This document shows positions 1-984 of a stretch of DNA of 64,000 bases, piece by piece. The notes beneath the pieces are model-generated. The model was not told where the DNA came from and searched no databases. It saw nothing but the letters and a program-made list of their open reading frames with translations. Position 1 is the stretch's first letter. Each line of letters starts with the position of its first letter. The stretch comes from Octopus bimaculoides (Eukaryota). The DNA lies in NCBI RefSeq assembly GCF_001194135.2, contig NC_069002.1, forward strand, positions 15,079,466 to 15,143,465, in the 5' to 3' direction. Made by a program: the position numbers and the translations under genes.

Positions 1-224
1 TTATTTTCCCTAAAACTATATATATTTTATATATATATATATATATAAAACCAAGTCTGTGCTTGACTGTTTCTTCCATTCCTTTCATTTACAGTCTTGA
101 TTATTGTGTAATAAGCAACATTTGCATATTTTAAACTGGTGTAATTACATAGTATCTAAAAAAACAGATAAACTAACTATTGCAAAAAGATATGGTAGTA
201 ATAAAGGAAATGCTATTCGTAACA

Positions 225-333
225 GTACTAGCTACGGCAGAACATATTCTAAAATTTGAGCGATACAGAGAAGATTAGCATGTCCCCTGCGTAAGGATGA
301 CATGCAAATTCGTGAAGCATTCCATATCTTTTT
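225..333 (+). pseudogene. U6: Full-length U6 snRNA retrocopy
   Basis: gtactagctacggcagaacata...ACAGAGAAGATTAGC...ttccatatcttttt; about 12 mismatches over ~107 nt to the canonical vertebrate U6 sequence as I recall it; fused to a SINE tail. Confidence 0.92.
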
Positions 334-403
334 GACTTAATCCTTTTGTCTGTCCTTGTTTGTCCCCTCTATGTTTAGCCCCTTGTGGGCAATAAAGAAA
401 TAA
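334..403 (+). mobile_element. 3' 70 nt of tRNA-derived SINE family E, fused to U6
   Basis: Near-identical to 45672-45740 (gacttaat.c.tttgtctgtccttgtttgtcccc...gtgggcaataa). Confidence 0.85.
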
Positions 404-984
404 GTAACAGATGTGGAATCACAACTGCCACATCGTCATTTAGCATCTGCTTTCCATGCCAGCATGGGTTAGGTGGTTTGACTGGAACTGGTAAGCTGTA
501 GGGTTACACCGTGTTCCAATCTGCTCTGGCCTGGTTTCTACAGCTGGATGCCCCTCCTAACACCAACCACACCAAGAGTGTAATGAATGCCTTTTATGTG
601 TCACTGGCATGGTTGCCAGTTACATGACTCCCGCATCAGCCATGACAATGATTTCACTTGACTTCATGGGTCTTCTCAAGCACGGCATATGACCAATGGT
701 CTCTGTCACTTGTCATTGCTTCTGTGAGGTTCAACATTTGAAGATCATGCTTCACCGCCTCATCTCCATGTCTCACAAAAAATAAAATAAAAAAGAAATG
801 TCTTTCCCTGACCTTCTTGTGAGTTTTATTATAAGATTTACTGGTAAACTGAGATACTCCCTTCAAGAACAACATACTCAGGTATACATGAAAGTTTGGA
901 TAAAAAGACTCCAAACATGAGTCGCAAGACTTCAGTAACATGTGGTTGATTTATAATAGCAAACATTTCCCTGGCAAAGAGACA

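What the first reader, a model, noticed from the sequence alone, without database searches (positions are those of the whole stretch)
219..410. U6 snRNA / SINE-3'-end chimeric retrocopy inside one TSD
Seen: a complete U6 copy from nt 1 to its oligo-T (225-333, ACAGAGA box and AGC intact) joins, with no spacer or microhomology, the last ~70 nt of SINE family E (334-403, near-identical to 45672-45740). The whole unit is bracketed by GTAACA(G) at 219-225 and 404-410. Established: mammals have U6/L1 chimeras, attributed to template switching or RtcB ligation of U6 2',3'-cyclic phosphate ends. Inference: an equivalent chimera-forming route works in this mollusc, with a SINE as the 3' partner, presumably mobilised by a non-L1 LINE. 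I am not aware of this being described in cephalopods.
Basis: partly seen in the sequence, partly recalled or inferred. Interest (0 to 1): 0.75.

Follow-up and report, generated by a model that had tools for sequence, protein, structure and literature searches.

The report
Octopus U6 / SINE-tail chimeric retrocopy
A decayed full-length copy of the U6 spliceosomal RNA is fused directly to the last 70 bases of a very abundant octopus SINE and flanked by one 7-bp duplication. It looks like a single retrotransposition of a joined RNA, a kind of event already known in vertebrates.

Summary
The sequence features are all present. Rfam finds a full-length U6 at 225-331 (98 bits), extended by its T-run to 333. 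Bases 334-403 are the 3' end of a hyper-abundant tRNA-headed SINE. GTAACAG occurs at 219-225 and 404-410, exactly at the outer edges (chance about 0.002-0.01). The best reading is one LINE-mediated insertion of a U6 + SINE-tail template. The U6 ends in the five U of the mature snRNA. The junction lies 5 nt upstream of the point where this SINE's body meets its exchangeable tail. It is a single copy, not a family.

Three things could not be done:
- Reads across 333/334 could not be inspected, because a human-likeness filter blocks U6.
- No orthologous site could be recovered.
- No genome-wide census was possible.

Doucet et al. 2015 describe U6 chimeras with non-L1 LINEs and their SINEs (platypus L2/Mon-1, Anolis L2, RTE and AnolisSINE2), with similarly short duplications. 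I found no report for cephalopods. Verdict: a probable new member of a known kind, resting on one locus, of modest interest.

The parts
219..224 (+). 5' copy of the target-site duplication GTAACA. The next base, G225, is shared with U6 nt 1, so the repeat is 6 or 7 bp.
   Evidence: Read directly. Identical to 404-409/410.
225..333 (+). Full-length U6 snRNA retrocopy (a pseudogene): nt 1 through a 5-T run at 329-333.
   Evidence: Rfam RF00026, 98 bits, model 1-105/105. It mismatches 6-7 strongly conserved consensus positions. It differs by 2 of 32 bases from the species' own high-depth U6 5' 31-mers.
334..338 (+). GACTT: the last 5 nt of the SINE body that SINE families with different tails share. 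The chimera junction is 333/334.
   Evidence: Copies at 19992-19831(-) and 49712-49866 share the body up to this point and then carry other tails. 11,760 + 2,626 reads switch to another tail at 45675/45677.
339..403 (+). 3' tail module of the abundant SINE ('family E'), ending at the family's native 3' terminus.
   Evidence: 92.8% to 45672-45740. Read depth is about 10^4 per strand group in a 1-2% sample of each raw run. Only position 344 differs from the family majority. Loose ends cluster at 403/404.
404..410 (+). 3' copy of the target-site duplication GTAACAG.
   Evidence: Exact contigs 381-461 in X1, X4, X8, 380-470 in X13 and 380-410 within a 705-nt contig in X12 carry the SINE end, the repeat and the unique flank.
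45463..45740 (+). Reference full-length copy of the same SINE (tRNA-like head, shared body, same tail). Its own flanking repeat is about 12 bp (ATATCACACACA). It is interrupted by a 10-N assembly gap with duplicated edges.
33332..33539 (-). Second copy of the same SINE, with a deleted or diverged 3' end.

Best explanation
This is a single LINE-mediated retrotransposition of a bipartite template: a complete mature U6 snRNA joined at its 3' oligo-U to the last 70 nt of a SINE transcript.

Proposed sequence of events:
1. The SINE's LINE partner (unidentified, presumably a tail-recognising 'stringent' element) bound the SINE 3' tail.
2. It nicked the bottom strand opposite C218|G219 and primed cDNA synthesis at the SINE 3' end.
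3. It copied through the junction to U6 nt 1.
4. Second-strand cleavage 7 nt away produced the GTAACAG duplication. The single G shared by U6 nt 1 and the repeat gives 1 nt of microhomology at the 5' join.

The two RNAs were joined in one of two ways. They may have been ligated before reverse transcription, with the U6 2',3'-cyclic phosphate end joined to a 5'-OH end of a cleaved SINE RNA by an RtcB-type ligase. I slightly favour this, because the U6 part ends in exactly the five U of the mature form and there is no filler or microhomology. Alternatively, the reverse transcriptase may have switched template from a broken SINE RNA to U6. One locus cannot separate these.

The copy has since decayed and is not a working U6 gene.

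Shown: the anatomy (U6, SINE tail, repeat). Inferred: the single event, the enzyme and the way the RNAs were joined.
For: - Full-length U6 in sense orientation, model 1-105/105, followed by 5 T. Mature human U6 ends in 5 U with a 2',3'-cyclic phosphate (PMC6789731).
- Homology to the SINE starts at the very next base and runs to the family's native 3' end at 403/404.
- An identical 7-mer lies exactly at both outer edges, with chance 0.0017 to 0.012. No repeat flanks U6 alone or the SINE piece alone.
- The TSD size fits the 1-9 bp reported for U6 chimeras made by a stringent LINE (PMC4476161).
- The retained part is the exchangeable tail module plus 5 nt. In other SINE/LINE pairs this is the part that carries recognition by the partner LINE (PMC4476161).
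- The 5' flank 128-223 is absent from every retained contig, yet the word index credits the runs with 81% of the words of 100-520. This is as expected if the flank sits in one contig with U6 that the human filter removed.
- The 3' junction is in exact contigs of five runs.
Against: - There is only one locus, and a 6-7 bp repeat is short.
- No read or contig across 333/334 could be shown.
- At least 3 of the 4 sampled 31-mers starting in 285-352 are not credited to the species' own runs.
- In run X13 a 38-nt SINE contig runs through position 332 without the break that a second incoming path should cause. The junction k-mers are therefore either pruned from the contig graphs or absent.
- The U6 part looks more decayed (6-7 changes at conserved positions) than the tail (1 of 70 against the family majority). 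The species' true U6 is unknown, so the contrast is not significant.
- No empty orthologous or paralogous site was found.
Confidence: 0.75

Rival explanations
1. Two independent insertions. A U6 retropseudogene with the GTAACA(G) duplication came first. A 5'-truncated SINE then landed exactly between the last T of U6 and the 3' repeat without making a duplication of its own (or the reverse order).
For: SINE density is extreme in this genome: tail depth is about 10^4 per strand group in a 1-2% read sample. Adjacent insertions are therefore common. Tail-to-head SINE junctions are frequent, which hints at insertion next to existing elements. Doucet et al. judged one human U6atac/Alu pair without a TSD to be two events.
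Against: It requires base-exact placement and a TSD-less SINE insertion. No repeat flanks 334-403 alone. A stand-alone U6 copy ending in TTTTT, with neither a poly(A) nor a LINE-type tail, has no obvious route to mobilisation by a tail-recognising LINE. In platypus, U6 copies occur only alone (probable genes) or fused to L2/Mon-1.
Confidence: 0.08
2. Assembly artefact. The U6/SINE join, or the sequence between about 315 and 380, was created or collapsed by contig joining or gap closure in a SINE-rich draft assembly. The true locus differs, for example by holding more SINE sequence after U6.
For: The window has 1,235 N and a 10-N gap with duplicated edges inside another copy of this SINE. Sampled words starting in 285-352 are largely missing from the species' own runs. 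No retained contig covers 312-329 in five runs. The X13 contig shows no branch at 332.
Against: An assembler cannot join a T-run to GACTTAAT without reads that contain the join. A misjoin would not be expected to produce a complete U6 3' end abutting a SINE piece whose far end meets a repeat of the U6 5' flank. The missing words have other explanations:
- A short low-coverage path between two repeats is the kind of path that contig-graph simplification can prune.
- The index is demonstrably unreliable for repeated words. Exact words 339-369 and 337-368 are present in the species' contigs, although the index does not credit them.
- Contigs holding U6 appear to be dropped by the filter.
Confidence: 0.1
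3. The event is the same, but the 3' donor was the 3' end of the partner LINE rather than a SINE transcript. It would then be a U6/LINE chimera whose LINE part is only about 70 nt long.
For: The retained piece is essentially the tail module, which in SINEs is normally LINE-derived. The junction lies only 5 nt from the module boundary. Platypus U6/L2 chimeras carry short L2 pieces.
Against: The 5 nt upstream of the module boundary (GACTT) match the SINE body shared by families with other tails. Most genomic carriers of this tail continue upstream as SINE body: 332 contigs with a consensus agreement of 0.73. No LINE with this tail was seen in the window or in the supplement of the octopus LINE paper.
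Confidence: 0.15
4. It is a member of a U6-headed SINE family: a chimera that became a master copy and amplified.
For: SINEs with snRNA heads (U1/U2) exist (PMC4494074, listed). The architecture (pol III small RNA + LINE-recognised tail) is that of a SINE.
Against: Depth over 312-323 is zero at >=90% likeness in three raw-read runs and in contig run X1, and zero at >=98% in four more contig runs. Short pure-U6 contigs did pass the filter, so a multi-copy junction should have been seen. Metazoan U6 genes use an upstream promoter (general knowledge), so a retrocopy would not carry its promoter.
Confidence: 0.03

Closest known systems
U6/SINE and U6/LINE chimeras made by non-L1 LINEs in vertebrates: platypus U6/L2 and U6/Mon-1; Anolis U6/AnolisSINE2, U6/L2, U6/RTE (Doucet et al. 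2015, PMC4476161)
   Same: The U6 is in sense orientation and fused directly to a 5'-truncated SINE or LINE that ends at its native 3' end. A SINE dependent on a tail-recognising LINE is the 3' partner. The TSDs are short (1-9 bp in platypus). There is no poly(A).
   Different: Here the host is a mollusc. The U6 is full length, whereas almost all platypus U6/L2 chimeras have a 5'-truncated U6. The LINE partner is unidentified. Only one locus is known.
Mammalian U6/L1 chimeric pseudogenes (Buzdin 2002/2003; Garcia-Perez 2007; Moldovan et al. 2019, PMC6789731)
   Same: A full-length U6 ending in its oligo-U is joined precisely to a 5'-truncated retroelement inside one TSD. The same candidate mechanisms apply (RtcB ligation of U6>p to a 5'-OH RNA, or template switching).
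   Different: The 3' partner is not L1 and has no poly(A). The TSD is shorter than typical L1 TSDs. No experimental or RNA-level evidence is available here.
Fungal bipartite chimeras WEIRD/MGL (MINE) and WEIRD/Mg-SINE in Magnaporthe grisea (Gogvadze et al. 2007, PMC2104539)
   Same: They show the process outside mammals, with a 5'-truncated SINE as 3' partner and one TSD. Template switches occur at preferred sites, which may parallel the junction lying next to the tail-module boundary here.
   Different: The 5' partner is a fungal non-coding RNA, not U6. The TSDs are 10-20 bp.
SINEs with snRNA-derived heads (SINEU; Kojima 2015, PMC4494074)
   Same: A small nuclear RNA sequence sits at the 5' end with a LINE-related tail at the 3' end.
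   Different: Those are amplified families with U1/U2 heads. This is a single copy with a U6 head and no sign of amplification.

Membership tests
U6 spliceosomal RNA (Rfam RF00026) | Match to the covariance model above the gathering score over the full length | tested here: met
   98 bits against 44, model 1-105/105, window 225-331.
U6 spliceosomal RNA (Rfam RF00026) | Functional gene: invariant core intact and 5' stem paired | tested here: not met
   There are 6-7 mismatches at strongly conserved consensus positions (for example CAUGGCCCC to CAUGUCCCC, UUGgAAC to UUUGAGC) and one non-standard pair in the 5' stem. It also differs by 2 of 32 from the species' high-depth U6 5' words. It is a pseudogene.
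LINE-mediated bipartite chimeric retrocopy (U6/LINE or U6/SINE type) | The 5' part is a complete small RNA in sense orientation ending at its mature 3' end | tested here: met
   U6 nt 1 to a 5-T run. Mature U6 ends in 5 U.
LINE-mediated bipartite chimeric retrocopy (U6/LINE or U6/SINE type) | The 3' part is a 5'-truncated retroelement that ends at its native 3' terminus, fused without a spacer | tested here: met
   Homology to the SINE runs from 334 to 403. The family ends at 403/404.
LINE-mediated bipartite chimeric retrocopy (U6/LINE or U6/SINE type) | One target-site duplication encloses both parts and none encloses either part alone | tested here: met
   GTAACAG at 219-225 and 404-410, with an empirical chance of 0.0017-0.012. 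The repeat is short, so the test is met only at moderate strength.
LINE-mediated bipartite chimeric retrocopy (U6/LINE or U6/SINE type) | An empty pre-insertion site in an ortholog, paralog or other individual | not testable with these tools
   The flank 128-223 does not align at >=80% in four runs of other species. The nearest exon gave only a 1.1-kb contig. All runs of the species appear to carry the locus.
LINE-mediated bipartite chimeric retrocopy (U6/LINE or U6/SINE type) | The junction is present in primary sequence data | tested here: inconclusive
   The filter blocks 257-335. No retained read or contig covers 312-329. The index words for 285-352 are ambiguous.
snRNA-headed SINE family | Many copies share the same head/tail junction at different sites | tested here: not met
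   Depth over 312-323 is zero at >=90% likeness in three raw-read runs and contig run X1, and zero at >=98% in four further contig runs.
CORE-SINE superfamily (for the 3' partner SINE) | The conserved CORE central domain | not tested
   Resemblance of the body (GCCTTTCATCCTTTCGGGGTCGATAAATTAAGTACCAG...) to the MIR/CORE sequence is recalled from memory only. Octopus OR1/OR2 are cited as CORE-SINEs, but no reference sequence was available for comparison.

The most novel reading that the evidence does not exclude
The junction is not at a random point of the SINE. It lies 5 nt from the boundary where this SINE body is joined to interchangeable tails. The locus may therefore record the same recombination step that builds new SINEs in this genome (a pol III small RNA joined to the LINE-recognised tail module). 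That would imply a preferred cleavage or template-switch site at the edge of the tail, and would make this a nascent, never-amplified U6-headed SINE in a protostome.
Probability: 0.12. Interest if true: 0.5.

Novelty: new member of a known kind. Interest (0 to 1): 0.3.

Why it matters
If it holds up and proves recurrent, it would extend U6 chimera formation from vertebrates and one fungus to a mollusc. That would support the view that capture of U6 by LINE machinery, whether by RNA ligation or template switching, is a general property of non-LTR retrotransposition. It would also give octopus genomes, which are saturated with SINEs, a marker for which LINE/SINE pairs were active. As a single decayed locus it has no evident function and does not change current understanding.

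Tried and rejected
- Read laying over 312-470 gave no reads or contigs over 312-323, in three raw runs plus one contig run and in four further contig runs at >=98%. This is uninformative for the true locus. Raw coverage read was only about 0.7x per run, and contigs holding long U6 stretches appear to be dropped: the flank 128-223 is invisible although the runs hold 81% of the words of 100-520.
- Word-index probes gave a pattern I could not fully decode. The index fails to credit words that are demonstrably in the contigs.
- Orthologous empty site: the flank does not align in four runs of four other species. Look-ups of ORFs 104-259 and 385-501 found nothing on record. A homologue search with the nearest good exon gave one hit on a 1.1-kb contig. 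No Pfam domain was found in the neighbouring exons.
- Paralogous empty site: the 5' flank is unique, so none exists.
- Other small-RNA pseudogenes in the window: none. Sub-threshold Rfam hits are low-complexity noise. The 28-nt U6-like blastn hit at 29560-29587 is a chance match.
- LINE partner: no LINE 3' end with this tail is in the window, and the tail was not found in the supplement of the octopus RTE paper.
- A stable structure in the 70-nt tail: z = -1.56, not significant.
- ARAGORN finds no tRNA in the window, so the SINE head was not assigned to a tRNA.

Full report
**What is in the sequence**

Rfam's covariance model finds one snRNA in the 64-kb window. It is U6 at 225-331 on the plus strand: 98 bits against a gathering score of 44, covering model positions 1-105 of 105. 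The T-run continues to 333, giving five T. The ACAGAGA box and the AGC triad are intact. However, 6-7 strongly conserved positions differ from the family consensus, and one pair of the 5' stem is broken. The first 32 nt differ at two positions from short, high-depth U6 contigs of the same species. It is a decayed copy, not a working gene.

From 334 to 403 the sequence matches the 3' end of a SINE. That SINE occurs in full at 45463-45740 (92.8% over 69 nt) and, with a damaged end, at 33539-33332 on the minus strand. In a three-way alignment, homology begins exactly at G334. The SINE copies have C where the unit has T333. The join is therefore ambiguous by one base: it could be four T followed by CGACTT with later CpG decay.

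GTAACAG occurs at 219-225 and again at 404-410. G225 is also U6 nt 1.

**Is it more than chance?**

I slid a 179-nt unit along the window and counted flanking repeats. An exact 6-mer repeat at fixed boundaries occurs at frequency 0.0017. With one base of slack on each side the frequency is 0.012. The repeat is short, but it sits at boundaries that are defined independently by two homologies.

The 3' boundary is well defined. In reads and contigs of the species, thousands of copies of this tail stop matching after 403 or 404. Neither part alone is flanked by a repeat.

**The 3' partner**

The tail is hyper-abundant: about 10^4 reads per strand group in a 1-2% sample of each raw run. Position 344 is the only place where this copy differs from the family majority.

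Laying reads on the full SINE copy shows that the body is 2-3 times more abundant than this tail. About 14,000 reads switch to a different tail at 45675/45677. Two copies in the window (19992-19831 minus strand, and 49712-49866) share the body up to ...GACTT and then carry other tails.

The SINE is therefore modular, and its body/tail boundary corresponds to 338/339 of the unit. The chimera keeps the whole tail module plus 5 nt of body. Those 5 nt, and the fact that most carriers of this tail continue upstream as SINE body, favour a SINE transcript over the partner LINE as donor. This is not decisive.

The LINE partner was not found. Published work names an RTE element as the active octopus LINE (PMC9115989) and lists the octopus SINEs OR1/OR2 as CORE-SINEs. 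I could not test membership of this SINE in that superfamily.

**Support in primary data**

- *3' junction.* It is solid. Exact contigs cover 381-461 in X1, X4 and X8, 380-470 in X13, and 380-410 within a 705-nt contig in X12.
- *U6 body.* Five of the seven sampled 31-mers of 240-345 are held by a dozen runs of the species, drawn from four studies.
- *5' flank.* The flank 128-223 is absent from every retained contig, yet the same runs hold 81% of the sampled words of 100-520. The simplest explanation is that the flank lies in one contig with U6, and that contig is removed by the tool's human-likeness filter. The filter also refuses 257-335 outright.
- *U6/SINE junction.* It could not be shown. 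No retained read or contig covers 312-329. At least 3 of the 4 sampled words starting in 285-352 are not credited to the species' runs. A 38-nt SINE contig in X13 passes position 332 without the break that a second incoming path should cause.
- *How I read the junction result.* It fits pruning of a short, low-coverage path between two repeats when contigs are simplified. It equally fits absence of the junction from the reads. The index is unreliable for repeated words: words 339-369 and 337-368 are in the contigs although the index does not credit them. I put about 10% on an assembly artefact. An assembler needs reads containing the join, and a misjoin would not be expected to yield a complete U6 3' end plus a matching outer repeat.

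**Single copy or family?**

It appears to be a single copy. Short pure-U6 contigs of 31-33 nt did pass the filter, so a multi-copy junction would have appeared as short high-depth contigs or reads over 312-333. None did, in three raw runs and five contig runs. No other small-RNA pseudogene is present in the window.

**Mechanism**

The anatomy is that of a bipartite chimeric retrocopy. I propose the following sequence:
1. The SINE's partner LINE recognised the SINE tail.
2. It nicked the bottom strand opposite 218|219.
3. It primed on the SINE 3' end and copied through into U6 to its first nucleotide.
4. Second-strand cleavage 7 nt away produced the duplication.

The U6 part ends in five U. This is the length of the major mature human form, which carries a 2',3'-cyclic phosphate (PMC6789731). 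There is no filler and no microhomology at the join. That fits ligation of U6>p to a 5'-OH SINE fragment by an RtcB-type ligase before reverse transcription. It fits a template switch from the 5' end of a broken SINE RNA almost as well. I lean slightly to ligation, but one locus cannot decide.

Two independent insertions would need base-exact placement, a TSD-less SINE insertion, and a route for tail-less U6 to be mobilised. I give that about 8%.

The U6 part looks more decayed than the tail, but the species' true U6 sequence is unknown. With about 6 non-CpG changes per 100 nt expected, seeing 1 change in 70 is not significantly low (Poisson p about 0.08-0.09, my own hand estimate).

**Comparison with what is known**

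U6/L1 chimeras are classical in mammals. Doucet et al. 2015 (PMC4476161) showed that the process is not specific to L1:
- In platypus, U6 is fused to L2 or to its SINE Mon-1, with TSDs of 1-9 bp.
- In Anolis, U6 is fused to L1, L2 and RTE elements, and six times to AnolisSINE2.
- In human, U6/Alu chimeras are rare.

Magnaporthe has WEIRD/Mg-SINE chimeras (PMC2104539). The present structure matches the platypus and lizard cases in kind, including the short duplication. It differs in having a full-length U6 and in its host phylum. A full-text search found no paper combining U6 snRNA, chimera and octopus. That shows absence from that library only.

**Verdict**

The single-event chimera reading is the best explanation (about 0.75). 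The claim of a general pathway in cephalopods is untested. The phenomenon is a new member of a known kind. The one feature worth a second look in a genome-wide census is that the junction sits 5 nt from the SINE's body/tail boundary.

Noticed in passing
window 45735-45740 and 403-408; reads: A large share of reads that reach the SINE's 3' end continue directly into a SINE head lacking its first ~11 nt (...GAAATA|AGAATCGTTAGCACGCCGGGCG). For example, 5,749 loose ends lie at 45740, and there are 'goes back 138' joints. Tail-to-head dimers or tandem arrays of this SINE are therefore very common, or a dimeric subfamily has amplified.
   Followed up: partly
window 45603-45680, 19992-19831(-), 49712-49866: The SINE body is shared by families with at least three different tails, exchanged at one point (after ...GATGTAATCGACTT). 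This is modular tail swapping. About 14,000 of about 51,000 sampled reads switch to a CCCCCTCCCCCAAAATT... tail at 45675/45677.
   Followed up: partly
not in the window; contigs seen when laying 224-256: A U6-like locus has the same upstream flank (TTCTCATAATCTAATACCTCAAAATTTAGG) in organism A and in another species (E). It matches U6 from nt 1 through ACAGAGA and then diverges (…GGGAACGATACAGAGATTAATATTTAGGAG). A similar variant is in organism D. It may be a conserved U6 variant, or an old U6 fragment fused to something else.
   Followed up: no
window 45593-45602: A 10-N gap lies inside a SINE, with the same ~40 nt (cgactttgcctttcatcctttcggggtcgataaattaagt) on both sides. This is an unclosed or overlapping contig join, typical of a short-read draft. 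The window holds 1,235 N in all.
   Followed up: no
window 7687-8331(-), 39937-40602(-), 61538-62257(-); also 2797-3177(-), 35803-36096(-), 56250-56600(-); 6584-6922(-), 60422-60736(-): Three sets of paralogous long ORFs on the minus strand recur at intervals of about 20-30 kb. They suggest a large gene with repeated modules, or a tandem gene family. They have no Pfam match, and only one homologue (81% identity, on a 1.1-kb contig) in the 5.8-billion-protein collection.
   Followed up: partly
window 426-795: Another high-copy repeat (depth up to ~10^4 reads at 545-563) with an A-rich 3' end starts about 20 nt downstream of the chimera. Other copies continue upstream with ATCATCATCAT..., so this copy is 5'-truncated or diverged at its start.
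   Followed up: no
word index, window 285-352: The run index does not credit the species' own runs with sampled 31-mers in this stretch, although some exact words (339-369, 337-368) are in their contigs. Either repeated words are capped in the index, or the junction path is pruned from the contigs.
   Followed up: partly
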